A DNA stretch of 64,000 nt, from NCBI GenBank assembly GCA_977020255.1, contig CDROCS010000316.1, positions 62,001 to 126,000 on the forward strand. The letters run 5' to 3'. This document shows, in pieces, positions 901-54,242 of the stretch (position 1 is its first letter; every line of letters starts with the position of its first letter). Origin of the DNA: Obrimoposthia wandeli (Eukaryota). A program made the position numbers and the translations under genes. The notes beneath the pieces are model-generated. The model did not search any database. It worked only from the letters and a program-made list of their open reading frames with translations, and was not told the DNA's origin.

Positions 901-3900
901 ACTTTAGTAAATGTCAACACATTTCCACGCAGTAGATGTTCATTGGATGAGGAGTCATCATCCGTTATGTCAAGTCATGGATGAGGTCATTGTCCGTCAA
1001 AATGAGTTATATCATAAGAAAAACAAAGGGACCTTCATGTCTCCTGAAAATGGTCATCTCTAATTCACGAGATCATGGAGTCTGTGATTTAGACACGACA
1101 ATTTACGCTACTCGTACAGTATGCTTTGGTAGTATTTGCAGTTTACTGTCCATTACTTTAATGTATCAAAATCAAATCTAATTTCTGATTTTCGTATATA
1201 ACCTTTTGAATATTAATGGAGGGCTTATAAATGAAAACTTATAAAATATAATGCCCTGTATTTATCATTTTGAAATTCTTAAAACTTTATTTTTAGCTTA
1301 AAAAAACCCTACTTAAGATTTTATGGCTAAAGGTTTTGTCCAAATGTTTCATCAAGAGCTGCTTAACGAACTTATTCGAAAATGAATAATTAAAGAGGAA
1401 GCGTGGAAAATATAATCTTTTCAGCCATGGCGAAGAAACCCAAGACCAACTATTCCTTAATCGGTCCCAACAGCTAAGATGACTTTGTTATTAATTGCTT
1501 TTTGTGGTGATGGAAAATTTGCGATTTATTGAAAATCTGAAGATGAGACTGTGTAAATGTAATATCAGTAAAGATAATAAAAGATCATCTCGAGAAACAA
1601 ATTTTGAAATCCAGGAGTTATTGTTTGCATGTCTATGTAGACTGAATGCGGTGTAGACTGAAATATATTCTATGGTCTTCAGTTTAAGTGTCAAATTGTT
1701 CTAGTCGTGCTACTGTATGATTTTTATAATTATTTTTAATATAAGATTTCTTAACAATGTGATTCAGATATTTTCCATACAATTATTCGACAATAGAGTG
1801 CTGAATCAAGTTGGATTATTTCAATAAAAATAAAAGGCCATTATATGCAATTAGGTTTTGTCATCTGCAAAACATTATCGTTCATTATAATCCTTTTCAG
1901 TATCTCTGCCCAGATCAGCTGAGCCAAATCAGAACATAAATAAATGAAATTGACATCCCAGAGTAACAAAGCGCGTTTCGTCCGGAAATTTGCCAATTAT
2001 TGAACTTCGATAATCCTCACTCTCTTCAACTTCGTTTCGTGTTTTCGAGAGGGGTTCCATTTGACAATTATCTCCCCATAGATGATTTATGGCCATCAAG
2101 GACTCTTTTCAGTCAGATGTGACTTCTTTTTTAATCTAAATCACTATGATACAAAATCCATTCAATAATTAAAATTGGCTTTCAATTTCGTTTAGACACA
2201 GAATAAATACAATTTAGAACAATTTAATGGATTTCTAATCTGATTGACTGAGTAACAGTAAAATCTGGATGTGTAAATTTTCTCGCGAATTGCCTCTTTC
2301 TATTGGTCACGGCAGAGGGAAACATAATATTAGCTTTTGATCAACACAGAAATTGACGATTTGGGAAAAACAATATAACATAGCATATCTTTCTTAGCAT
2401 AAGTCATTAGAAATTCCATAAATATCCAGATAGGGTGCCTTTTTAACGGTTCCTTTTTAAAAATTGATCTTAATTTTTTAAAGTAATTGGTGCCTTACCA
2501 TTTAATATAGGAAATATTTATTTTTAATTATTTTGTATCGTCAAGCCGTTTCAAAACGAAGATCAGCAGGTCGTTAATTTTATTACCTGGTTTTCAATTG
2601 TTGCTATTTTTAAACTATTGTCAGGATTTCAAATACTTTCGAAATTCAAATTTTAATTCAAAAAATTCATTATTTCACTTCATTAGGTTTTGAATTACAT
2701 TTTTTGATGTAGTGAAATAATTCAATAGACACTAACTTTTACACGGATTTCAAATAACTAAAACAATTTTCGTATTGAGTTTATTAAAACAAATTCAAAT
2801 ATTTTTTTTCGCTAAATACATTAAAATAAATTCAATGAAGACTAAATTGTGTACTGATCCCAAATAAATTAGTCACATTAACTACACGAGACCTCATTTC
2901 ACATTATATGATGACAATCTCCATCTATGTTTGCATATTTATTTGTTTATAAAGAATAAGATAAAATAGAAAAACATTAATATTTTTAAAAAATTATAAC
3001 ATTATACAATCTTTGATCAGTTTCCCTATTTATTTTAAACTTTCATCATGTTTTGTCTTAAATCCTTGAATCATGATGAAGAGGTTTCATTTTTCATGTT
3101 ATGACCAGCTTTCCATTATAATGCACATATGCGTTCATAAGCTCTAATCAATATTTAATTACTAGAAATGTTATATCCAATTGTTTAAAGATTTCATTCA
3201 GTTGTTTGATATCTTCATGAATAATCTGGATTATGCAATCAAACTTGCTTTTATTCAATTTGACATAATTGGATAAGATATATGTTACTGGAAAATAAAT
3301 GTTGAGTAAAATCCTTAGACTCTTTCTTGCTTATTTTCTTTAATAAAATTGTGTTGACAATTGATTGTAACTATTTTTCTGGGGTATTCTTTGGAGTCAC
3401 CTTTTCGATTTTGATAATTGTCCATTGTAATCAGAAATAATTACTAAAATAAATAGTTAGTTGTTTATAACCAACAAAACTACATCTGATTGGTCAGTGA
3501 TTTGATTGTTTGTTTCGTATGTTGATTGTTGTTGATTGTATTTGATGATTGTTAGTATTTGTTTTGTTTATACAATGTTTTTATGTATATACGTATGTTA
3601 GCATTGAGTTGTTTATATCATATGTGTGCATGTGTATATTTGATTTATAAAATTATTGCGTGAATGTATGTAAATATTCATACATGAAACATTTTTTTAA
3701 TCAATTTGAAATAAAATTATTATTATATACTTTATAAATAATCAATTGTTTTTTCAAATAAATTTAATTTGTTTTTATACATTCAAATGTGAAAATTGAT
3801 TCCATAAAATTAATTGAAATTTATAGATGATTTTAAATATTGATACATATTATATACGTTTGAAACATATTTATATACTCTATTCATGAATTCAATTTTC

Positions 3901-41299: not shown

Positions 41300-41350
41300 C
41301 TGTCCAGTGCAGTGGTTTATCTCCTCGTCAGTCTGAGGTGCAGTTGTAAT

Positions 41351-41514
41351 TAATTTATGTCAATTTAAATGGACATTTTTACTGAGGTGCCCACAGTCAG
41401 GGAGGTATTCGTTATCATCCTCCGACGGGATAAATCCGTTTTGGCCTGCCTTGGCCTCATCAGGGAGGTGGCTAAAATGTCAGAGATAAGTCTGACAAAA
41501 AAGTAAAGCGGTTT
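41351..41514. repeat. 164-bp direct repeat, copy 1 (copy 2 at 54079-54242)
   Basis: Near-identical at offset 12728; one substitution seen, in the terminal palindrome. Confidence 0.97.
41419..41468 (-). ncRNA. Type I hammerhead ribozyme fold, G12A variant, copy 1
   Basis: Minus strand CCTCC-CTGATGA-GGCC(AAGGCA)GGCC-AAA-ACGG(ATTTATC)CCGT-C^GGAGG: all three helices pair and the cleavage triplet is GUC. Confidence 0.8.
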
Positions 41515-43889
41515 TGACCACCAAAGATTTGCCGCTCAATAGCAGCGGCCTCTCTTCTTCACCTTCCTTCCTCATCATCATTCTTGGTCATCCCAGTCGA
41601 CCGGTGTGTACAGTCATCCTATCATCCAGGCAGGCTTCAAAAAATCCCCGGGTGCACGTGTGTGTATGTCCAGAGCCGGAAATTTATCACTTCGATTCTC
41701 CCAGCGGAATCTTCCTCTCAGACTTCCATGCACCTGCCGACGCCTGCCTCAGTCGCAATCGGATGTAGCGACTTTACACACACACCATCTCTCTGCGAAA
41801 TGGTTAAAAGCACCACTTTAGTAAGTGCTGCCTCACAATTTTTTGATTATTGGAATAACCAAATATTTTGGCTAACACTATTGAAACTTAACAATTTGGA
41901 AAAAAATAAAAAAATTATTTGATCCATTTAGTTTATTGTCTCTTCCAAACAATTCAAAACAAAATATATTTACAAATCATTGGAATTGAAAGAAAGTAAA
42001 TCATAACCAACAATTTGGTGAGCCCAACCAAGGACGACAAAAACTACAGGTCATTTATTTGATTTTGTACAATCATATTTTTTTATAATAATAATTTATT
42101 TAATATTATTCATTTTTTGCATTTTAGTCACTATTTATTTGTTTATAACATTTTACATTAAAAGTTTAGTTTTATTCATTGTAACAATTTATTTAACGTT
42201 GATAATCAAATATTCATTTTATTTTCTCACGTTTAAGCCGCAATTTATATCATTTTTACATTTAGTGTTCATATTTTCTTTTGCCTTTTGTAACATTTTA
42301 ATTTACTTTGATTATTAAACATTCATTTTATTGTATACATAGCATTCTAATTTACAAAATAACTAGAAAAGCCGTTTATTTAGTTTAATTTTATTGTTTT
42401 GGTCTACATTTTTATTACATAGATATAACTTGCTAATTTGAATACATTTAGTATCAGAAGATTTTCTTTGTGTTATTTGAGCTTGTTGGAAGTATTTTAT
42501 TTTAATTTTACAACCTTAAAAAATTACAATTTCAAAGCTAGCAACATTCTATTTTTTGTGAAAAATTTGTGATTAGTGTGAAGTTTTAGGAACTCTTATA
42601 TCATATAACATTGATTAATATTATAAATATAAAATAAAAATACTATAGTTGAGGTGTTTGCAGCTTTGCGCAGAAGCCTCGTAAGATTAAACATAATTTT
42701 TGTTTTCAGAAACATAGTCGAGTTTCATTCTCTGATTTTCTTTTACAATTTGAGTTGTGTAGGTAAATTTAATTGTAATATTAATAGAAAAAATAATTTA
42801 TCGGTTTTTGGAGTTTTGTTCATATAAAGGCTAAACACTAGCTGTTGTAGGATAGAGTTTTGAACACTGACAAATATATGGAAAGGGTAATCAACAGACG
42901 ATGCATAATTCAAATAAAATAAATGTTGAGATAGATTTTAACATTTTTTCTTTAAACTGGTTTACCAATAAAGATTCGTTTTTGAAAAAATATAAATTGG
43001 AGTGGATTTATATATTAAAGACGTAATAATAAATTAAAAAACTAAAAAGATAATAAAAGTTGAAATAATTATATATATTTTTTGAATAAATATAAAACTA
43101 ATCATAAATTTGAATTTTTGTCACGAATTGTCTTGATTCCCAAGTTGCATCGAGTACTATCATATAAAGACTATACACTGGTTGACGTGGGTAGTGCTCA
43201 CATTTTATTTTTTATCACAGTGATAAGGGGCAGAGATTTTCGGGAGAAAATTTTTGAATCTTGATATTTTACTCTAACTTAAAATCAACATAAAATCAAA
43301 AATCAACATAAAACTTCAAATAGATAAATTTTCTCCAGAAATTTTTTGAACGTGTTTTTGATTTTACTAAGATAATTTGATTTTGAAATTAACCAACATT
43401 TTTTACGAATATCACCGAAATCTTTTTAATTCTCGTACGCATTACACATTTTTAATTTGTCCCAATATTTAATTTAGAAACATAAAATAAAGTAATAACA
43501 ACACAAACCCAAATATCACAAAAACAGACCCAAAATAAATAAACAAAAACGTAGCGCTAGTCTTCACTGGATACGCATTCAAACTAGATTAGTAAAAACT
43601 AACGCAAGCAAAACACCACCACAAAAACCTAAATCACAAATAAACTTCAGAACATTTAACGAATTCTTTCCAGAAACCTCCGTACATCAACACATAAATC
43701 AATTAACACCAAACAACTCAGAAAATCAAAACATAACATAAAATTTGGATACAGAAAGTTTATCCTTACTGCAAACATCTGACTCAGACAACTCGTCAGA
43801 AACATTAGAAACAGAGGCAGAACCAGTACCATCTAACCTAGAATTAAATAACGAACAAATAAACGAAGTACCCCAAACCATAGACTAAA

Positions 43890-44332
43890 CATACCACTAG
43901 ACGCATTTAATGGTGATAAATCATCTTTACCAAAATTCTTGAAATATGTGATTCTTTTGCTCAAGCATTCAAATGGACAAACCCAGAAAAACTTAGAATT
44001 TTTTTCAGCATACCTAAAAGGCACTGCCCTAACCATTTATAGAGAACTAACAAATCAACAAAAAGACACATGGGAACATTTAGTTCAACATTTTCAAAAT
44101 AGGATTTTAGGAACACAGTCCGACCAGAACTACTTATATCAATTTAGACAACGAGAACAACATGTAGGAGAACCCACAAATATATTCGCAGTCGAATTAC
44201 GATGACTTGCACTAAAATCTTTTCCCGAAATAGAATAAGAACGCTCAAAAACACCACCAAACTACAATCAAACTCAGAATTTTAATCCAGATACTCCATA
44301 TAATTTTCAAAATCATCAACAATTTAGACCAC
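43890..44332 (+). pseudogene. Ty3/Gypsy gag relic, interrupted at 44333
   Basis: LDAFNGDK..YLKGTALTIYREL..TWEHLVQHFQNR..FRQREQHVGEPTNIFAVELR*LA (Retrotrans_gag-like). Confidence 0.8.
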
Positions 44333-45350
44333 AGTAGGTAGAAGGATGGAGTCTAGACCACTTGACTCCCCCCTTGTGCGCACACAATGTTAAAGGATTT
44401 TTTCAACATAAGGGTGTCACACTATAAGGGTGTCTTGTCACACCATAAGGGTCTGGCTCAGAAATGTTAAGATAGGGGGGGAGGGGGGAAGGGTCAATTG
44501 ATCTAGTCTCCACCCTTCTTTGGTATACCATTAAAGGGTTGTGGTCGTCCATAATTTAAAGGGTCAGGCAGAGTTTTGACTTGAAGGTTTTAAGGTATGG
44601 TCATGACCGTCTATGGTTGACCATCACATCTAAAGGGTTGTAGTCGTCCATAAATCAAAGGGTCAGACTCAGTTTTGACTTGAAACTTTGAAGGTATAAT
44701 TAAGGTCAACTATGGTTGGCCAACACATCTAAAGGGTTGTGGTCGTCCATAAGTCAAAGGGTCGGGCTAAAAACAAAGTTTTTTTTTAAAATATCAAGGT
44801 TTTAATACATGGTTGTAATCATCTTTAGAAGGTGAATTCACCAATAAAGTATGGCCGTCCATAAATCAAAGGGTCGAGCTAAAGACCAAATCAAGTTTTA
44901 AATGTCAAAATTTGAATACATGGTTGTAATCATCTTTAGAAGACGAATTCATCCATATATGTATGGTCGTCCATAGATGAAGGGTTTCAAAAAAGTTGGA
45001 AATTCATAGTTTTAAGTACATGGTTGTATTCGTCAACATATTACGAGTTTAATCATGTAAAAATTTTATGGTCGTTCACAAGTTAAGGGTCAGATTTGGC
45101 ATAAATTAAGAAATTATATAGTATTCAATCAATTATTATATGTGAAAGTTCACTCTTAAAAGTTAAGGAATGTATTACGTAATCACACACACACTATTCT
45201 ATGTGAAAATTTAGTCTAAAGTTCACTCTTATCAGTTAAGGAATGTGGTTTTTAACACACACATTATTCTATGTGAAAATTTAGATCAATGTTTTTTCCT
45301 AGGCTTACACATCTAAAGAATTATGATAAAATTTCTTTAAATAACTTAAA
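44333..45350 (+). mobile_element. Solo Polinton-like terminus with ~99-111-bp subterminal tandem repeats, inserted in the gypsy gag
   Basis: Starts AGTAGGTAGA, identical to the first 10 nt at 56968; aaagggttgt(g/a)gtcgtccataa recurs at about 44533, 44632 and 44731. Confidence 0.55.
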
Positions 45351-45549
45351 TTATATATTAAAATTAAAAAAAAATAATAAGAAAGAAGTTAGAAAATAAT
45401 ACAAAATTAAACATATTTATTATGTAATTTCATAATATCATCTTCAAACTTAATTGAATAACATTTGCAAAGTAAGAAAATCCATTCTTTATAAATTCTT
45501 TCCGATTTAACGACTTAGTTACAGCGGAAAAAACAACATCAACAACACT

Positions 45550-46700
45550 CAGTTTAACGCTATGAATGAAAATTAGTAAAATATTAATTTATTTGAATAT
45601 TTGAATGAAAGTTTGAAAAAATGAGAGTTAGATTGAATGCAAATACGAGCAAGTGAATGTAATTTAAAAAAATAAGAGTGTCGCGAGTATGATTGAATGT
45701 AAGTATAATTTAGACTATAAGTAAATTAAAATCGATTTTCGTAATCAACTATAAGAAGCAGTGATATTGAGTTATGTTAAAAGTTAGAATGACTAAGTTA
45801 CAGCAATATTAATAGAAAACAATACTATGTTTGACAGTATAAGTGAAAATTAGGAAAATATTAATGAATTTGAATGCTACAGAATGATTGTAAGTGAATA
45901 CAAGTATGAATGCTAGTATGAATGTCAATACAAGTAAGTGTCTTAGCAAGTGAATGTAATTTAAAAAATAAGAGTGTCGATAGTTTGATTGAATGCGAGT
46001 GTAATTTAGACTATAAGTAAATTAAAATAGAGTTTTCGTTGAATAAATTATAGTTAGATTGAATGCAAATGAATGCAAGTATGAATGCAAGTGAATGCTA
46101 GTATGAATGTAATTTACAAGTAAGAGTCTTAGCAAGTGAATTTAATTGAAAAAATAAAAATAAGAGTGTCGATAGTTTGATTGAATGCGATTGTAATTTA
46201 GACTATAAGTAAATTAAAATAGAGTTTTCGTATGAATAAAGTAATGTTAAGTTACAGTTAGATTAATAACAAGTAAGCAACTATAAGAAGCAGTGATATT
46301 GAAGTATGTTAAAAATTAGAACGACTAAGTTATGGCAAGATTAATAGAAAACAACACTAAGTTTGAAGATATGAATGAAAATTAGTAAAATATTAATGTA
46401 TTTGAATGTAATTGAATGATAGTTTGAATAAATTACAGTTAGATTGAATGTAAATGAATGCAAGTATGATTGAATGCAGTTACAAGTACAAGTAAGAAAG
46501 AATACGACTGCAAGTACGAATGTCAATTATGAATGAAAATTAGTAAATATATTAATGAATTTGAATGCTAGTTTAAATATATGAGAGTTAGAATGAATGT
46601 AAGTGAATGCAAGTATACATGTAAGTGAATGCAAATATGAATGCAAATACAAGTACGAATCTTTGCAAGTGAATCTTAAACTGCAAGTGAGTACTAGCTA
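45550..46700. repeat. Complex satellite of GAATGCAAGT-like 10-mers with longer repeated blocks
   Basis: ataagagtgtcg..gtaatttagactataagtaaattaaaat recurs at about 45672, 45969 and 46160. Confidence 0.8.
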
Positions 46701-47339
46701 ATTATTAAATTAATACTATCAATCAATGAAGATGATGTTACAACCTGATGAAGTTATAATAATTAAGATGTGAACTTACATATTTTCACATAGTTTACCC
46801 CATGTTAAAGTTAACCTTTCATACACACTCCTGCAATTAAATAATTAAAATGTCTTATCTCGTTTAATAACATTCCTTAATTGAAATATTTTAAAATAAT
46901 TAGATAAATTTAAATTCTTTATTTTTAAATAACTTGATTATAAAATTATATTCGTAAATATAATTGAAATTATCATTATTCGTTTCTCTTTTTAACTATT
47001 CGAAAATATATTTATATACAAATTTAGTAAATTAACTCAACAAACAATTTTTTTTTAATTACTTTATATTTTTGCCATTCTCTTATCAATATAATATGAA
47101 TATTCAATTATTTCTTCAAAAATTATTTTTATATGTTATATAATATTTCTTTACCACATTATTGTGGTATTTTATCAAGTGATTTTAACTTTAAACTATT
47201 AAAAAATATTTTAATTATAAAGTTAGTAGCTGTACCCCACCGACTGCCTATAATATAAATTTCAAATATAAAGTACTATTAAATGTATTCTTTCAAATAG
47301 TAAATGTTCTTTCGAGTTATTTAATTTTGTTTACTAGAC

Positions 47340-48340
47340 ATTCGAAAATTGACTTGTAAACATAATATAATTTCGCATATATTCACTTTAATATGTTGTA
47401 AGTTATTACTTTAATATAATTTACAACCAAAACATCAAGTAATTTACTTAATAATCATAATATTAATAATTTGTACAATAAATCGACTTGTAAACATCAT
47501 ATTTGTTGTTGCATATATTCACTTTAATATGTTGTAAGTTATTACTTTAATATAATTTACAACCAAAACTTCAAGTAATTTACTTAATAATCATAGTATT
47601 AATGATTTGTACGATAAATTGACTTGTAAACATAAAATATTTACAACAAACTTCAAGTAGTTTGCTTATTAATCATAATTTAAGGATTTGTACAATAAAT
47701 TGACTTGTAAACATAATTTATTTTGTATATATTCATTTAATATATTGTAAGTTAATACTGTAATATTCCATTACATAAAAAATTAATTGATATTTTACTG
47801 TCGTTTACTATAAATTTACTTGTAAACATAATATATTTATTCATATATTCACCTTAATATGTTGTAAGTTATTACTTTAATATAATTTTCAACAAAAGCT
47901 TACAGTAGTTTACTTATTAATCATAAGTTTAATGTTTTGTACAATAAATTGATTTGTAAACATAATTTATTTTGGCATATTTTCAATTTAATATATTGTA
48001 AGTTATTACTTTAATATAATTTACAACAAAAACTTCAAGTAATTTACTTGTAAACTACAATATTAATTTGTTGTTGCATATATTCAGTTTAAAATGTTGT
48101 AAGTTATTACTGTAATATAATTTACAACAAAAACTTCATGTAGTTTACTTAATAATCATAATATTAATGATTTGTACAATAAATTGACTTGTAAACATCA
48201 TATTTGTTGTTGCATATATTCACTTTAATATGTTGTAAGTTATTACTTTAATATAATTTACAACCAAAACTTCAAGTAATTTACTTAATAATCATAATAT
48301 TAAGGATTTGTACAATAAATTGACTTGTAAACATAATTTA
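47340..48340. repeat. AT-rich tandem satellite, unit about 134 bp with shorter variants
   Basis: gacttgtaaacat..tattcactttaatatgttgtaagttattactttaatataatttacaac recurs about 7-9 times. Confidence 0.9.
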
Positions 48341-48356
48341 TATAATTATCACTGAG

Positions 48357-49295
48357 ATCTGCAATGTTCCACATTCCGGCTTCTGCATTTACACAGACAA
48401 CATCGACTGTCTTGCATATGCCGATGACCTGGATCTGTTGGCAGTCACACAGGAGAATCTCCAGTCGATGGTGTCACGTGCCACAGAAGTCGCCACTTGG
48501 AGTGGTCTCAAGTTCCGCCCAGCCAAATGTGCCTATCTGTCGTTCCCTGATCACACTGACACTCTTCTCGTCCATGATCAGCCGATCCTACGAGTGTCTC
48601 ACTCCACCTACCGATACCTCGGTGTCGCGTTCGGACACTTCAGCGCCAGGATCCTCATGCTCTGCTCAAAACCGCCCTGTCAGACATGAAGAAGATTCAG
48701 CTTAGCTCCCTTCACCCGTGGCAGAAGATTGATGCATAAAAGACGTTCATACATGGATTCTTCATTTTGATGCTTACGGTCGATCTGAAGCTCTTGAAGT
48801 GACATTGGCTATGATTTGTGCTTGAGCAACATAACCAGATCAGCCATGCACTTGCCTCCTACCAACACAAAGGCGTATCTATACAGTCCCAAGCAGCTCA
48901 CCGGTGTCGGTCTAGTATCTGCTCGCGATGAATACTCTGTCCAATCCGTCACCCAAGCTTTCCGAATGCTCACGATCCCGGACTCTCGTATTTGCATTGT
49001 GGCTCTCAAGGAGCTCTGTGAAGTCAACATCGCTCAAACCCACATCCGCTCATCTGCCTCTGCGATCGCTGACCGATGCTTTGTTAGCTGGCTCAATCAA
49101 GGTTCCGGTGACGAGCAGTTCCCGTCCTGGTGGTCCCGTGTCCGATCCAGCATTTTCTACCTGCGCAAGATCAGTCGTTCTCCTCGACGTCAAGTGCCCC
49201 TACGACGTTGTGGAAAACATCGCCCACAGTCGTGTCCTCAACGTCGAGAAGTACACCGCGCTGGCCAACGAGGTATGCGCCGTTCTCTCGGATTA
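48357..49295 (+). mobile_element. R2/NeSL-type (RLE) non-LTR retrotransposon fragment, internally deleted
   Basis: CLAYADDLDLL, GLKFRPAKC, YRYLGV, HLPPTNTKAYLYSPKQLTGVGL, then LLDVKCPY..EKYTAL (RLE); GC-rich. Confidence 0.85.
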
Positions 49296-50760
49296 GGAGC
49301 AGTTTTAGGACAACAGGAAAATAATGAAAAAGATCAAAATATAGCATATGCAAGCAGAGGTCTTAAAAAATATGAAATAAATTACTTGACAATAGAAAGA
49401 GAATACCTAGCTATTTGTTTTTCTATGGAACATTTTAAACATTACTTATTAGGTCGAAAGGTTTATGTCTTCACAGATCAAAGACCATTACAATGGCTTT
49501 TAAATCATAAGGATACAATATCTAGATTAATGAGATGAGCATTAATTTTCCAAAAATATGACATTGAAATAAAATATAGAAAATGAAAATCTAACGCCAA
49601 TGCAGATTGTCTATCACGAATAAGAGAATAAATAAACGAAATAACTTCAAACGATATCGAATTAAATCTTTTTACAATAATTCAAGCTAAATATGATGAA
49701 AAAGTAATTACTAAACTTCAAAGCAAAGATAATGAAATTCAGCAAATGACTAAATACATTAGTACAAATGAAGTACCAACAGATGAAAGATTAAGAAAAC
49801 ATTTAAAAATTCACGAATCACGATACAAATATAGTAACGAAATATTATATTATTTAAATGACAAAAATTTATATTCACTAGTAATTCTCAAGGAAATTCA
49901 ATATCATTTACTTCTTCGATATCATAATGGAGCCCTAGGACACTTATAATCAAAAAAGACACATTCACGATTAAATTTAAAATACTATTGGATCGATATG
50001 AAAGAAGATGTAAAAATTGGTGTAAAACATGTGAAATATGTCTTAAACGGAAAAATACTTTACGTACGACAAAATTACTATTAAAACCGATACCTTATCC
50101 ATCAGCCCCCATGGAAATTATTAACTGACAAAGGTCCTGAGTTCATAAATAACGTACTAGCGTCAATAGCCGAAATTTTTCACATACAAAATATCAATAC
50201 AACACCATATCACCTCAAACTAACGGATTAGTAGAACGATTTAATAGAACCCTTGAAGATATGATGGCATCATATACAAACAACAACCAAACAGATTGGG
50301 ATTTACATATACCTCCATGCCTTTTTGCATATAGAACATCAGTACATGCATCCACAGGAGAAACACCTTTTTATCTTATGTTCCTCAGAGATCCTCAAAT
50401 ACTTATTGACCTAACATTTGAACAACCTACTACACAATACTTAGAAATAACTGAATATAAAATAGAAATTAGAGAAAGAATAAAACTAGCATTTGAAAAA
50501 GCTAAATTATTTGTAAAAAACATACTAGAAAATTACAAAGAATATTATAATAGAAGAACTAATCCATCAAATATAAAAAATACAGAAGTAAAGTGATGAT
50601 TCACAATCCACAAATTAATGTAGGATTGTCACGCAAACTATCAACACCATACAAAGGACCATATACAGTCATTAGCACCAAAGGAACTAACATAACAGCC
50701 AAACTTGACAATGAACTAAAATCAAAATAAATAAGAACACATATAAACAGATGTCGAGAA
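49290..50760 (+). mobile_element. Ty3/Gypsy pol relic: RNase H and integrase
   Basis: GLGAVL..IAYASRGL..EREYLAI..HYLLG..TDQRPL; NADCLSR; HNGALGHL..YYWIDM..C..C; TDKGPEF; TNGLVERFNRTL; TPFYLMFLRDP; PYKGPY. Confidence 0.92.
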
Positions 50761-50899
50761 ATACCGAAAATACCAAAAGTAAAAAGTCACAAATATAACT
50801 TAAGCTCAACTAGCGATAATACTGTTCTACAAATGTTAACAATAAAAACTCACAAAAACAAAACAAGACTATTTGAGTCATCAAACTAGAAATACAATA

Positions 50900-52200
50900 A
50901 AAATGTCAATAAAAGAAATGTGTAAAATAATGATGTTATTGGTAATATATTTTACAATAAAAAGTAACCTACTGAAAGTAAACGCAATAAACCTGAATGA
51001 AAATCAATTAATAGTAAAACAAAAAACAAATAAATACGACTAATCAACACATCTCATAAAATATATTTGGATTAATTACAATAATACCTGAAATCACATC
51101 AATAAAGTTAAAAATATCACTCTTTACAACAAAATTAGGAAGAATTCAGATAATACAATCTGAAAAAAATCAAATCATAAATATTTACAAAATTGAATCA
51201 AAAAATTATATAATACAATTTTTAAGAACAGAAACACAATACAAAATAAGAGTTAAGTCGAATTTAAAAAATATAGCACTTTATGAAAGAATTGTAGGAA
51301 CGCATATATATTTAGCTTCAATATTAAAAACGACAGCAAATTATATAACAAAACATCAATCATGATAAAATGAGAATTTCAACTTAAAATAGATAACTTA
51401 GATAAAGCCCTCATTAGAATTAGATATATAGGACATAATGCTCATTTGTGAAAAGACACAGATAAACAATTAAAAAAATCACAAATCAGAACAAATCTAA
51501 CTATAAAAATATAAGATATTCAGAAAAAATAATTATGGATAATAGAGAATGTGTAATCACTAATAAACCAATGATGTACAATGGGGACAAAAGTTTGATA
51601 TTTGTAGAAATCTAACAAACTAATTGATTTTAGGAAATAAAATATCCAAATTATATCAACCTACTATTTTTTGTGGCCATTAGTCAGTAATTACAATTAA
51701 GAAATATATCAAAGAAACAACCATAAAACAAATACATCATACTACAACATTCAAAACAAAGACTTATGAAATCACAAATCAAATTAATATTACAGAAAAT
51801 ACAAAAAATTAAAACTACAGAAACAATACCATATAAATCATTTAATGGAAGTCTAAAATACACTATGGTAAACAAAAATACTCAAAAATATAAATAACAA
51901 AGAAATTTTAGTAACAATCATAATAATTAAAATATTTACATTAATCATAAAATAACATGGAAAGTCATTAAAGTAAAAAATAACACAATTTTCAAAAAAC
52001 ATTATCGAACTAAATATTTTGAACCTCCTGGCGCATTTATAACATCTATCATACCAAGCTCTTCAAACTCATCTAACGTATCAATAAAAACAATAATTGA
52101 AAACAATAAACAGAAAAGAAAAAAATCTTTATAAAATTTTCACACAGAAAAAACATGTATTAACGTACTAAAATAAAAATTATTCATAAATAAAGTAATT
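50900..52200 (+). pseudogene. Possible decayed third (env-like) ORF of the gypsy element
   Basis: Hydrophobic start MCKIMMLLVIYFTI after the integrase, and late hydrophobic ILVTIIIIKIFTLII; same A-rich strand bias; heavily broken. Confidence 0.3.
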
Positions 52201-52287
52201 ATAATGTAGATAAATGAAAGTGCGTATGTGTTTAATTTAAATTGAAAATAGTAAAAGTAAACTTAAAACTTATTAAAATTTTAGAAA

Positions 52288-52596
52288 TGAAAAATTCAAA
52301 AATAGTACAGAATAACCTAAGAAGATATAAGAAGACAGAAGAAATGGGAAAAGAAATTGTTGATAAAAAATATAAATCTGAGATCGCATCTGAAAGACAA
52401 GGAAATGGAATGTGAGCGAGAGAATAATGCTTTTGGCGTTGCAATCGAAAGATTAGAACATAGCCAAACAAACAAGGAATTATTAGTACGACGACTCAGA
52501 GAAGCTTTAAACTCTCTTGTATCATTGAGATCAGTAATAAATCGATTAATGGGATTTCAACCTGGAGAAAGCGATGATTCCGGGTGTGAAAATTAG
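52288..52596 (+). pseudogene. Coiled-coil ORF with one frameshift
   Basis: KEMECERENNAFGVAIERLEHSQTNKELLVRRLREALNSLVSLRSVINRL heptad-like pattern. Confidence 0.4.
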
Positions 52597-53072
52597 TAAA
52601 ATTCCCAGTGAGTAAACTAAAATATAAATTAAAAGAAAATTGATAATGATTTTGAGCTCATGACTTGGAAAGAAAATATATTTAAAAATATGTATTAAAA
52701 ACAAATAAAACGAATATATTTATATAAATATGTATATATTGATATTGATAATAAAAGTAACAAGAATATGTCGTAAAGAATGAAAAATTTATATATTATT
52801 TATGTACCTGTTTGATTAAGCGTGTTACATCGAAAAACTAAAAAGATTTATAGACTTCTGATAAACAAATAGAGACAAATAAACTGACACGAACATTTCA
52901 TTTATATAACATTTGACAATTTTTATATTTGCATTTAAAATCAACATAATTTTTACTATATCTGTATACCCTACAGATGTAACCCACAAGTACAAATTCT
53001 CATTTGAACTGGCAGGTTGTGCCGCGGGGTAAGAGAGAAAAGCCAGTATAATTAACAGAACAACTTCCGGAA

Positions 53073-53971
53073 ATGGCAAAAATGGCTAAGTTTCTTTATG
53101 GAAAAATAAGGCAGTTTGAAACAAGGTATTTCCATAACCATTACGGAATAAAGATTTTTGAAAATCATACCCAGCTCCCAAATAACATCAAATTAAGAGA
53201 CACCCTTAGACAGAGTGTAATTCTCAACAAAATTGCAAAAAACCAACAGAACAAAGACTGTTTGAAGTGATGAGATTCTTGCCAACATACATTGACATTG
53301 AGATTCACGTAGCAAAATACCGTGGAATTTTAAAGCACAAGAGAAGCAAGCATTTCTTAGTCCTTTTCCTACAAAACCACTCTTACTGGTTGATGAGACA
53401 TCAAATAACACCCGATTTGATGATTCGTTTATCAGGTGGACATAATATATTATTCATAGAACAAAATGTGCGACATAGTCTTGTTCAAGTCTGCCATTTG
53501 AATATCACCGCCAACAATCCTCAAATATTCTTTGTCGATTGTGAAATGGTAGTAAAAATGAATAAATAACCAACCCTTGCCAGCATTACTATAATGAACG
53601 AAAGCGGACAAATCGTTATGGATACAAAATGCAATAGCGGAGACAAAATCAGGAATTATGTGACAAGAATAATGGACCTCAACGAACGTAAGTTAAGAAA
53701 CCAACCTGATTCTGTCGAGGTATTACCACAAGTTCAGTCCTTACTAAGAGGCAACATTTTCTTAGGAACGGGGATAACTAACAACCTCAAGGTATTAGGA
53801 CTACAGAAAACCGATTTTTCGTACACGGTGGACCTAGGAGCAACACAGACCATTCGGTTAGAGATGAATTGTAGAGAACAAGCTGGACTCACTCGAATGG
53901 TCTCGTGGTATTTCAATAAGGAAATACAAAAAGATACCCACTCTAGCCTCGTGGACACACAATGGACCTGA
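53073..53971 (+). pseudogene. REX4/REXO1/ISG20-like DEDDh 3'-5' exonuclease, intronless, with a frameshift near 53250 and a stop at 53567-53569
   Basis: FFVDCEMV (Exo I), LASITIMNESGQIVMD, IRNYVTRI, QVQSLLRGNIFLGTGITNNLKVLGL (Exo II-like), FNKEIQKDTHSSLVD (Exo III). Confidence 0.85.
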
Positions 53972-54078
53972 CACGTTTTCCTCCATATAGAGCAAGAACT
54001 TATAGAATAATTATTTTTATTAACGTCCGAGATCTGACTTAATTTACCCCTATAGGATTGTTGGGCTTTTAAATTAAC

Positions 54079-54242
54079 TAATTTATGTCAATTTAAATTG
54101 ACATTTTTACTGAGGTGCCCACAGTCAGGGAGGTATTCGTTATCATCCTCCGACGGGATAAATCCGTTTTGGCCTGCCTTGGCCTCATCAGGGAGGTGGC
54201 TAAAATGTCAGAGATAAGTCTGACAAAAAAGTAAAGCGGTTT
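54079..54242. repeat. 164-bp direct repeat, copy 2
   Basis: Matches 41351-41514; contains the perfect 20-bp palindrome ATGTCAATTTAAATTGACAT (54085-54104) and hairpin TGTCAGA-gataag-TCTGACA. Confidence 0.97.
54147..54196 (-). ncRNA. Type I hammerhead ribozyme fold, G12A variant, copy 2
   Basis: Identical to 41419-41468. Confidence 0.8.

What the first reader, a model, noticed from the sequence alone, without database searches (positions are those of the whole stretch)
41351..54242. Hammerhead ribozyme inside a 164-bp direct repeat present twice, 12.7 kb apart
Minus strand: helix I CCTCC/GGAGG, core CUGAUGA, helix II GGCC/GGCC with an AAGGCA loop, helix III ACGG/CCGU, and a GUC cleavage site. 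This is a full type I hammerhead except G12 is A (AAAAC instead of GAAAC) in both copies. G12 is the general base in canonical hammerheads, so these may be inactive or a natural variant. Type I hammerheads in animals are known from Penelope-like pLTRs and retrozymes, and the unit length fits that range.
Basis: partly seen in the sequence, partly recalled or inferred. Interest (0 to 1): 0.85.

Follow-up and report, generated by a model that had tools for sequence, protein, structure and literature searches.

The report
Crippled antisense hammerhead in retrotransposon LTRs
The two repeats are the end pieces (LTRs) of one broken virus-like Gypsy retrotransposon that carries a self-cutting hammerhead RNA motif on the strand opposite its genes; this copy's motif has lost a key catalytic base, while related copies keep it.

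Summary
Two 168-nt copies, 99% identical, lie at 41347-41514 and 54075-54242. Each has a complete type I hammerhead layout on the minus strand, with A instead of G at position 12.

The interpretation (Penelope pLTR or retrozyme, possible natural variant) does not hold. The repeat is the outer part of the LTR of a plus-strand Ty3/Gypsy-like element:
- The LTR has TGTTGG...CCAACA termini.
- A TGG-starting primer-binding-like site follows the left LTR.
- gag, RT, RNase H, integrase and exonuclease remnants lie between the repeats on the plus strand.
- The right LTR is cut off after 184 nt.

The hammerhead is therefore antisense to the element's genes.

Across this 1.35-Gb animal genome the LTR family has thousands of candidate copies, and most keep G12 (85 G, 14 A, 1 C in 100 listed). 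Diverged LTR families keep the motif with compensatory changes in all three helices, so the family ribozyme looks selected.

The window pair shares private changes (A12, a broken helix III pair, a broken helix I pair). It is therefore a decayed lineage that integrated with an almost dead ribozyme.

No RNA data were available and cleavage is untested. The scan had already noted antisense LTR hammerheads elsewhere in this genome.

The parts
41343..42012 (+). Left (5') LTR of the plus-strand element, about 670 nt. It starts GTTG (11 nt missing compared with the right copy) and ends CCAACA.
   Evidence: Family homology has sharp ends at both sides. The termini TGTTGG...CCAACA form an inverted repeat.
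41347..41514 (.). Direct repeat, copy 1 (inside the left LTR)
   Evidence: the repeat finder family D4, 168 nt
41417..41469 (-). Hammerhead type I motif, copy 1. A at position 12 = 41442; C17 = 41424 (predicted cut between 41424 and 41423); helix III outer pair broken at 41435; helix I sixth pair broken at 41418.
   Evidence: Rfam alignment at 16.9 bits; sequence; comparison with 28 other copies; fold
42016..42033 (+). Primer-binding-site-like motif starting TGG, 3 nt after the LTR end
   Evidence: Sequence. The same junction (LTR end, 2-3 nt, TGGTGAGC...) occurs in two other LTR families, L010 and L014. The motif has 98 genomic hits against 2 for the control.
43852..44202 (+). gag-like remnant
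   Evidence: Pfam Retrotrans_gag, E 7e-5, just under cut-off
44532..48344 (.). Block of several tandem or short dispersed repeat families where protease and the first part of RT would be expected
   Evidence: the repeat finder families D1-D11
48324..48686 (+). Reverse transcriptase fragment (YADD region)
   Evidence: Pfam RVT_1, 30.1 bits
48798..49535 (+). RNase H domain remnant
   Evidence: Pfam RT_RNaseH, E 1.6e-24
50153..50593 (+). Integrase core remnant
   Evidence: Pfam rve_3, E 1e-4, weak. The stretch 49293-50593 belongs to a very abundant family.
51550..54011 (+). 3' module of the element, with an exonuclease ORF remnant at 53570-53968
   Evidence: Pfam RNase_T, E 8.5e-5. The module is shared at 87-92% identity with 29 other genomic loci.
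54059..54242 (+). Right (3') LTR, starting TGTTGGG and cut off after 184 nt
   Evidence: Sequence. No second copy of 41515-42012 exists anywhere in the window. The junction with the exonuclease module recurs in 24 of 30 loci.
54145..54197 (-). Hammerhead type I motif, copy 2. A at position 12 = 54170; C17 = 54152.
   Evidence: Sequence. Identical to copy 1 over the motif.

Best explanation
The two repeats are the left LTR and the truncated right LTR of one defective plus-strand Ty3/Gypsy-like (virus-like) retrotransposon of about 12.9 kb. About 80-130 nt from its outer edge, by position in U3, the LTR carries a type I hammerhead on the strand opposite the element's genes.

Shown:
- LTR ends, the primer-binding-like site, the gene order and the antisense orientation.
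- Recurrence of the same arrangement across the genome.
- Conservation of the motif, with compensatory changes, between diverged LTR families.

Inferred:
- In intact family members the ribozyme cuts antisense RNA that runs through the LTR. Such RNA could be read-in from flanking DNA, piRNA-cluster-type precursors, or transcripts from an antisense or bidirectional LTR promoter. Cutting would separate the capped upstream part from the antisense copy of the element body.
- The window copy is an almost dead version. A12 removes the general base, and two further lineage-specific changes open the outer pairs of helix III and helix I. Both LTRs share these changes and no other genomic copy does, so the changes were in the template RNA (or arose in that round of reverse transcription) before integration. 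The element therefore integrated at least once without a working antisense ribozyme.
For: - Repeat and motif.
- Plus-strand gag, RVT_1, RT_RNaseH, rve_3 and RNase_T hits between the repeats, with nothing comparable on the minus strand.
- LTR termini TGTTGG...CCAACA and the TGG-starting site 3 nt after the left LTR.
- The same LTR-PBS junction in L010 and L014; leader homology in L010 and L021; leader joined to the exonuclease module in L051.
- The family's outer end is sharp (...CCCAACA) in nearly all of 30 copies.
- The exonuclease module is followed by the hammerhead repeat in 24 of 30 loci, and every repeat hit is antisense to the module.
- Only the two window copies carry the private pair of changes.
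- Position 12 counts are 87 G against 11 A, and 85 G / 14 A / 1 C.
- Covariation: 96.6% of cells paired, 7 of 16 pairs with changes on both sides, 0 of 500 shuffles as high, slid controls 50% or less.
- Natural G12 copies fold into the exact three-way junction as the minimum-energy structure, while the window copy does not form helix III properly.
- The G12A rate loss is taken from PMC2553840.
Against: - No polypurine tract is visible just before the right LTR, and target-site duplications could not be resolved.
- The right LTR is truncated, so a full LTR pair is not seen in this window.
- The interior is a mosaic. A tandem-repeat block replaces part of pol, and the integrase stretch belongs to a different, very abundant family. 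The link between these LTRs and the gag-pol remnants therefore rests on order and strand, not on shared copies.
- No hammerhead here or in the relatives reaches Rfam's gathering score.
- No RNA run was listed, so antisense transcription and cleavage are untested. The proposed role is inference only.
Confidence: 0.75

Rival explanations
1. One reading: the repeat is a Penelope-like element pLTR, or a non-LTR retrozyme unit, whose sense-strand hammerhead processes the element's own RNA.
For: Type I hammerheads in animals are so far described in Penelope-like elements and non-LTR retrozymes (PMC7229834; PMC8557442). At first sight many copies look 5'-truncated on the hammerhead strand.
Against: No minus-strand coding capacity lies between or beside the repeats. 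The RT-type hits are on the other strand and come with RNase H and integrase. The family has two defined ends with TG...CA inverted termini and a length of 670-950 nt, followed by a TGG-starting site. Copies are dispersed singly, not in short tandem arrays. The apparent truncation is divergence of the inner LTR part between LTR families. Helix III has 4-5 pairs, unlike the minimal variants reported for Penelope-like elements.
Confidence: 0.04
2. The LTR family belongs to an LTR-type retrozyme-like, non-autonomous element whose own sense strand is the hammerhead strand. The plus-strand genes between the repeats would then be unrelated insertions. RNA between the two hammerheads would be released and perhaps circularised, as in plant retrozymes.
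For: Both LTRs carry the motif in the same direction, so a minus-strand transcript spanning the element would be cut at both ends. Short derivatives of about 3.6 kb flanked by two hammerhead repeats exist, L049 and L050. No polypurine tract is seen for the plus-strand reading.
Against: On the hammerhead strand the position after the upstream LTR has no TGG-starting site, and the position before the downstream LTR is not purine-rich. On the plus strand a TGG site sits 2-3 nt from the LTR in three LTR families. The exonuclease module and the leader are joined to the LTRs in many independent copies, always with the hammerhead antisense. The hammerhead is type I rather than type III, and the interior is coding.
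Confidence: 0.12
3. The motif is a passenger relic: a hammerhead from some older element was captured once in an ancestral LTR and persists without any function.
For: U3 regions tolerate insertions. After insertion, copies lose G12 at about the rate of other CpG sites. The window element integrated with a nearly dead motif.
Against: LTR families that have diverged beyond recognition over most of their length keep the core invariant and change helix pairs in a compensatory way in helices I, II and III.
Confidence: 0.09

Closest known systems
Plant LTR retrozymes (hammerheads in both LTRs; Cervera et al. 2016, PMC4918200)
   Same: A hammerhead sits in each LTR of an LTR-type retroelement with a primer-binding site, and the elements are related to or mobilised by Ty3/Gypsy machinery.
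   Different: Plant retrozymes have type III hammerheads on the element's own sense strand, a short non-coding interior (about 600-1000 nt) and circular RNA intermediates. Here the hammerhead is type I, the host is an animal, the motif is antisense to the primer-binding site and genes, and the interior is of the coding gag-pol type.
Animal non-LTR retrozymes and Penelope-like element pLTR hammerheads (PMC7229834; PMC8557442; bioRxiv 10.64898/2026.07.22.740005)
   Same: Type I hammerhead in an abundant animal retroelement repeat; stable helices like those of the invertebrate retrozyme ribozymes.
   Different: Those elements lack LTRs, a primer-binding site and a polypurine tract. They occur as short tandem units or pseudo-LTR partial tandems, and the ribozyme is in sense. 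Here the copies are dispersed LTRs with TG...CA ends and a primer-binding-like site, and the ribozyme is antisense.
G12A hammerhead (sTRSV crystal-structure variant, PMC2553840)
   Same: The same single substitution of the general base, in an otherwise complete core.
   Different: That variant was engineered to slow cleavage. Here the substitution is a natural G-to-A transition at a CpG site in a decaying copy, and it comes with further stem defects.

Membership tests
Hammerhead ribozyme, type I (Rfam RF00163) | Core C3-U4-G5-A6-N7-G8-A9 | tested here: met
   CUGAUGA at 41463-41457 and at the matching place in copy 2
Hammerhead ribozyme, type I (Rfam RF00163) | Core G12-A13-A14 | tested here: not met
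   Both window copies have A12 (41442, 54170). Most family copies have G12: 87 against 11, and 85/14/1.
Hammerhead ribozyme, type I (Rfam RF00163) | A15.1-U16.1 pair and cleavage triplet GUH | tested here: met
   ACGG...CCGU followed by C17 (GUC)
Hammerhead ribozyme, type I (Rfam RF00163) | Three helices around the core with helix I open, supported by covariation | tested here: met
   96.6% of cells paired and 7 of 16 pairs compensatory, spread over all three helices. Caveat: the seed copies were picked for an intact core and at least 4 of 5 inner helix I pairs.
Hammerhead ribozyme, type I (Rfam RF00163) | Score at or above Rfam's gathering threshold (34 bits) | tested here: not met
   Window copy 16.9 bits. 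Best natural relatives 32.1, 30.1 and 29.3 bits. Other hammerheads in this genome do pass, up to 38.5 bits.
Hammerhead ribozyme, type I (Rfam RF00163) | Self-cleavage at C17 | not testable with these tools
LTR of a Ty3/Gypsy-type LTR retrotransposon | Direct terminal repeats flanking an interior with gag, RT, RNase H and integrase on one strand | tested here: met
   The repeats flank plus-strand gag, RVT_1, RT_RNaseH and rve_3 remnants in that order. The right LTR is truncated to 184 nt and pol is broken.
LTR of a Ty3/Gypsy-type LTR retrotransposon | TG...CA ends with short terminal inverted repeat | tested here: met
   TGTTGG...CCAACA
LTR of a Ty3/Gypsy-type LTR retrotransposon | Primer-binding site starting TGG a few nt after the 5' LTR | tested here: met
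   42016-42033. The same junction occurs in L010 and L014. The matching tRNA was not identified.
LTR of a Ty3/Gypsy-type LTR retrotransposon | Polypurine tract just before the 3' LTR | tested here: not met
   The plus-strand text before 54059 is not purine-rich in the window or in relatives.
LTR of a Ty3/Gypsy-type LTR retrotransposon | Short target-site duplication | tested here: inconclusive
   The right LTR end is missing in the window, and the few solo copies with both ends show no clear duplication.
Penelope-like element pLTR | RT plus GIY-YIG ORF on the hammerhead strand, in partial tandem arrangement | tested here: not met
   No minus-strand ORF or RT hit between the repeats. The longest family members are 670-950 nt and non-coding.
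Animal non-LTR retrozyme | Short (170-400 nt) tandem units, each with a hammerhead, without LTR or PBS features (PMC7229834) | tested here: not met
   Copies are single and dispersed, with LTR termini and a PBS-like site.

The most novel reading that the evidence does not exclude
A lineage of animal Ty3/Gypsy-like, virus-like retrotransposons keeps a working type I hammerhead on the antisense strand of U3 in both LTRs. Its role would be to cut antisense RNA that enters or leaves the provirus (host read-through, piRNA-cluster precursors, or antisense LTR transcripts). That would make it a ribozyme-based shield against antisense or double-stranded RNA silencing, or an insulator. The window copy would be a lineage that lost it.
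Probability: 0.25. Interest if true: 0.8.

Novelty: new variant of a known kind. Interest (0 to 1): 0.5.

Why it matters
Hammerheads in animal genomes are so far tied to Penelope-like elements, non-LTR retrozymes and a few host genes, and LTR-borne hammerheads are known from plant retrozymes only. I found no paper in the searchable library that describes an antisense, covarying hammerhead in the LTRs of coding-type Gypsy-like elements of an animal. Such a motif would add a new ribozyme-retroelement partnership and suggest a role in handling antisense transcripts.

This particular locus matters less in itself, because its ribozyme is a near-dead copy. It does offer a natural comparison, though: an element that integrated without a working antisense ribozyme.

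Tried and rejected
- Rfam at gathering threshold on the whole window found nothing. A 13.6-kb E-value scan gave only a chance snoRNA-like hit.
- I first read the family as a 5'-truncating non-LTR or Penelope-type 3' tail. I dropped that reading once both ends proved defined, with TG...CA termini and a PBS-like site.
- A 4.6-kb tandem array on contig C4172 looked like a possible Penelope tandem. It is a segmental array with an Xrn1-like ORF and a degraded LTR piece that lacks the hammerhead core.
- RNA evidence: no RNA run was listed for the element or its flank. Only four runs of unknown kind from one sample hold it, kept as contigs.
- A search with the RNase H-integrase stretch gave an abundant family on other contigs that overlapped none of the exonuclease or LTR hits, so it did not link pol to these LTRs.
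- The primer tRNA was not found. The window has no tRNA gene, and the genome motif search cannot separate tRNA genes from PBS copies.
- The target-site duplication check was inconclusive.
Full report
**Observation.** The repeat finder returns one two-copy family of 168 nt at 41347-41514 and 54075-54242, 99% identical and 12,728 nt apart.
- helix I CCUCC/GGAGG;
- core CUGAUGA;
- helix II GGCC/GGCC with loop AAGGCA;
- A where G12 is expected (41442 and 54170);
- helix III ACGG/CCGU;
- GUC with C17 at 41424 and 54152.

Rfam gives no hit at gathering threshold for the window. When only 141 nt are scanned, Hammerhead_1 aligns end to end at 16.9 bits (cut-off 34, E 0.11). On its own this copy would not be convincing.

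**The family.** The window comes from a 1.35-Gb, AT-rich animal genome (30% G+C in the window).
- A search with the 168 nt gave 2,394 first-look candidates, and the best 40 are 89-96% identical.
- In an alignment of 30 copies the majority state at position 12 is G and at position 7 is C.
- Exact-context pattern counts give 87 G against 11 A. With a shorter context, the first 100 of 117 places give 85 G, 14 A, 1 C and 0 T.
- G12 is the G of a CpG. In the 30 copies, transitions at CpG positions are about twice as frequent as at other C/G positions (8.1% against 4.2%), and CpG is mildly depleted in the window (observed/expected 0.84).
- A12 is therefore the commonest kind of decay at this site.
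- G12 is the general base. G12A lowers the rate more than 500-fold in minimal hammerheads and about a million-fold in full-length ones (PMC2553840).

**What the repeat is.** I first read the family as the 3' tail of a 5'-truncating non-LTR or Penelope-type element, because copies share the last 200-300 nt and differ upstream. That reading failed on four counts.
- The longest relatives are only 670-950 nt and non-coding, and they have a defined far end.
- Both ends form an inverted repeat, TGTTGG...CCAACA on the plus strand. Nearly all of 30 copies stop sharply at ...CCCAACA on the hammerhead strand.
- In the window, the left repeat unit ends at 42012. Three nucleotides later comes TGGTGAGCCCAACCAAGG, placed as a primer-binding site would be.
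- The same junction (LTR end, 2-3 nt, TGGTGAGC...) is present in two other LTR families, L010 and L014. The motif has 98 genomic matches against 2 for the reversed control.

**The interior.**
- Between the two repeats the plus strand carries a gag-like remnant (43852-44202), an RT fragment (48324-48686), RNase H (48798-49535), an integrase core (50153-50593) and an RNase_T-type exonuclease (53570-53968).
- The minus strand carries nothing comparable.
- The stretch 51550-54011 is shared at 87-92% identity with 29 other loci.
- In 24 of 30 loci this stretch is followed within about 250-350 nt by the hammerhead repeat. Every repeat hit is in the opposite orientation to the exonuclease.
- Leader sequence after the left LTR is shared with L010 and L021 at matching distances. 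In L051 the leader sits directly in front of the exonuclease module.

Taken together, 41343-42012 is the left LTR and 54059-54242 is the first 184 nt of the right LTR. The rest of the right LTR is missing from the whole window. The 12.9-kb span is one defective Ty3/Gypsy-like element on the plus strand. The hammerhead lies 80-130 nt from the outer LTR edge (by position U3) and is antisense to the element.

**Weak points of this reading.**
- No polypurine tract is visible before the right LTR, in the window or in relatives.
- Target-site duplications could not be resolved.
- The interior is a mosaic. A block of tandem repeats at 44.5-48.3 kb sits where protease and most of RT should be. The integrase stretch matches a different, very abundant family, whose best 40 scored copies are on contigs that do not coincide with the exonuclease or LTR hits.

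**Why both copies share A12.**
- Against the other 28 aligned copies, the two window copies share T7, A12, a G-to-A change that opens the outer pair of helix III (41435), and a T-to-A change that opens the sixth pair of helix I (41418).
- A genome-wide pattern search for the two private changes, allowing one mismatch, returns only these two places.
- Both LTRs of an insertion are copied from a single U3. The simplest account is that the template already carried these changes, or acquired them in that round of reverse transcription. Gene conversion between the LTRs is the alternative.
- Position 7 is free in hammerheads, so three of the four lineage changes weaken the ribozyme.
- The minimum-energy fold of the window copy no longer forms helix III properly. 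The natural G12 copies L012 and L031 fold into the exact three-way junction.
- This element therefore integrated at least once with an almost dead antisense ribozyme.

**Is the family ribozyme real?**
- Natural G12 copies score 26.8-32.1 bits against Hammerhead_1, E down to 5e-4 in 66 kb. That is close to, but under, the cut-off of 34. Other hammerheads in this genome do pass it.
- More telling, other LTR families share only the outer ~130-190 nt with the window LTR, yet they keep the invariant core while changing the stems. Helix II changes from GGCC/GGCC to GCCU/AGGC or GCCC/GGGC. Helix I positions change from U-A to C-G and from A-U to G-C. One helix III pair changes from G-C to C-G, and the loops differ.
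- On 25 variants the named structure has 96.6% paired cells, against 27-50% when the partners are slid. Seven of 16 pairs have changes on both sides, and no shuffle of 500 reaches the observed covariation score.
- Caveat: the variants were picked by a pattern that requires an intact core and at least 4 of 5 inner helix I pairs. Helix II, helix III and the outer helix I pairs were not selected for.

**Mechanism (inferred).** Sense RNA of the element contains only the complement of the motif, so the ribozyme can act only in antisense RNA crossing an LTR.
- Antisense RNA entering from the right flank would be cut just before it reaches the element body.
- Antisense RNA leaving through the left LTR would be cut just before the host flank.
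- Either way the capped upstream part is severed from what follows, leaving a 5'-OH fragment.
- This could limit double-stranded or antisense RNA against the element, or insulate neighbouring host DNA.
- A transcript crossing both LTRs would be cut at both ends, as in retrozymes, which keeps the retrozyme-like rival alive.
- None of this is shown. No RNA run was listed for this organism.

**Comparison with what is known.** The papers I could search place animal type I hammerheads in Penelope-like elements, Terminons, non-LTR retrozymes and a few conserved host loci. They state that the animal repeats lack LTR, PBS and PPT features (PMC7229834; PMC8557442; bioRxiv 10.64898/2026.07.22.740005). 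LTR-borne hammerheads are described for plant retrozymes, where they are type III, in sense and non-coding (PMC7761336). Three further searches found no report of hammerheads in LTRs of animal Gypsy-like elements. That is absence from this library, not proof of novelty.

**Earlier notes of this scan.** Notes on other pieces of the same genome describe antisense hammerheads in Gypsy LTRs and an exonuclease-bearing Gypsy lineage. Those notes led me to test the LTR reading. The tests reported above are my own.

**Verdict.** The Penelope/retrozyme reading and the 'natural variant' idea are not supported. The locus is a decayed member of an LTR family whose antisense hammerhead is unusual and probably functional at the family level.

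Noticed in passing
window 41353-41378 and 54083-54108 (minus strand text ...ATGTCAATTTAAATTGACAT...): An 18-nt perfect palindrome, TGTCAATTTAAATTGACA, lies about 30 nt from the outer LTR end. This segment is the best conserved part of the LTR across families (96-97% column identity) and is even kept in copies that lost the hammerhead. In window copy 1 it carries one mismatch.
   Followed up: partly
window 41391-41423 minus strand; same place in L012, L062, L057: The 3' cleavage product would start GGAGG, and about 11-12 nt later comes a second ACCUCCCUGAC, a partial copy of the ribozyme's 5' side. The two could pair and sequester the new 5' end after cutting. The arrangement is conserved in types A, B and E, but no covariation is available to test it.
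   Followed up: no
window 41475-41494 minus strand; L031, L052, L054 upstream of their hammerheads: A hairpin sits directly 5' of helix I in all variants: GUCAGA...UCUGAC in types A and B, and a much longer perfect hairpin containing the same words in types C and D. It may be part of an extended ribozyme fold.
   Followed up: no
L049 and L050 (167-291 and about 3712-3838); L051: There are short derivatives. A unit of about 3.6 kb holds the exonuclease module flanked by two antisense hammerhead repeats, and in L051 the leader is joined directly to the exonuclease module. These look like internally deleted, non-autonomous relatives.
   Followed up: partly
L052:3188-3247, L054:290-347, L031:1925-1980: Further hammerhead variants (types C and D) occur in a different sequence context, next to truncated exonuclease modules. 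I could not establish whether they also sit in LTRs.
   Followed up: no
window 44532-48344: A block of several tandem and short dispersed repeat families (units of about 99, 111, 136 and 281 nt) lies inside the element where protease and RT should be.
   Followed up: no
L031+L032 (contig C4172, 41000-60999): A tandem array with a 4,614-nt unit at 99.7-99.8% identity. Each unit holds a 405-aa ORF with an Xrn1 helical domain (Pfam E 9e-66) and a degraded LTR piece in which the hammerhead core is deleted.
   Followed up: partly
L045:2871-2956: A near-perfect 86-nt hairpin gives sub-threshold hits to several miRNA precursor families on both strands. It is probably an inverted repeat rather than a miRNA.
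   Followed up: no
window 49293-50593: The integrase stretch belongs to a family with 3,419 first-look candidates at about 93% identity. The relatives carry about 180 nt that the window copy lacks.
   Followed up: no
window 53980-54011 versus relatives: The window copy lacks about 190-280 nt that other copies have between the exonuclease module and the last 60 nt before the right LTR.
   Followed up: no
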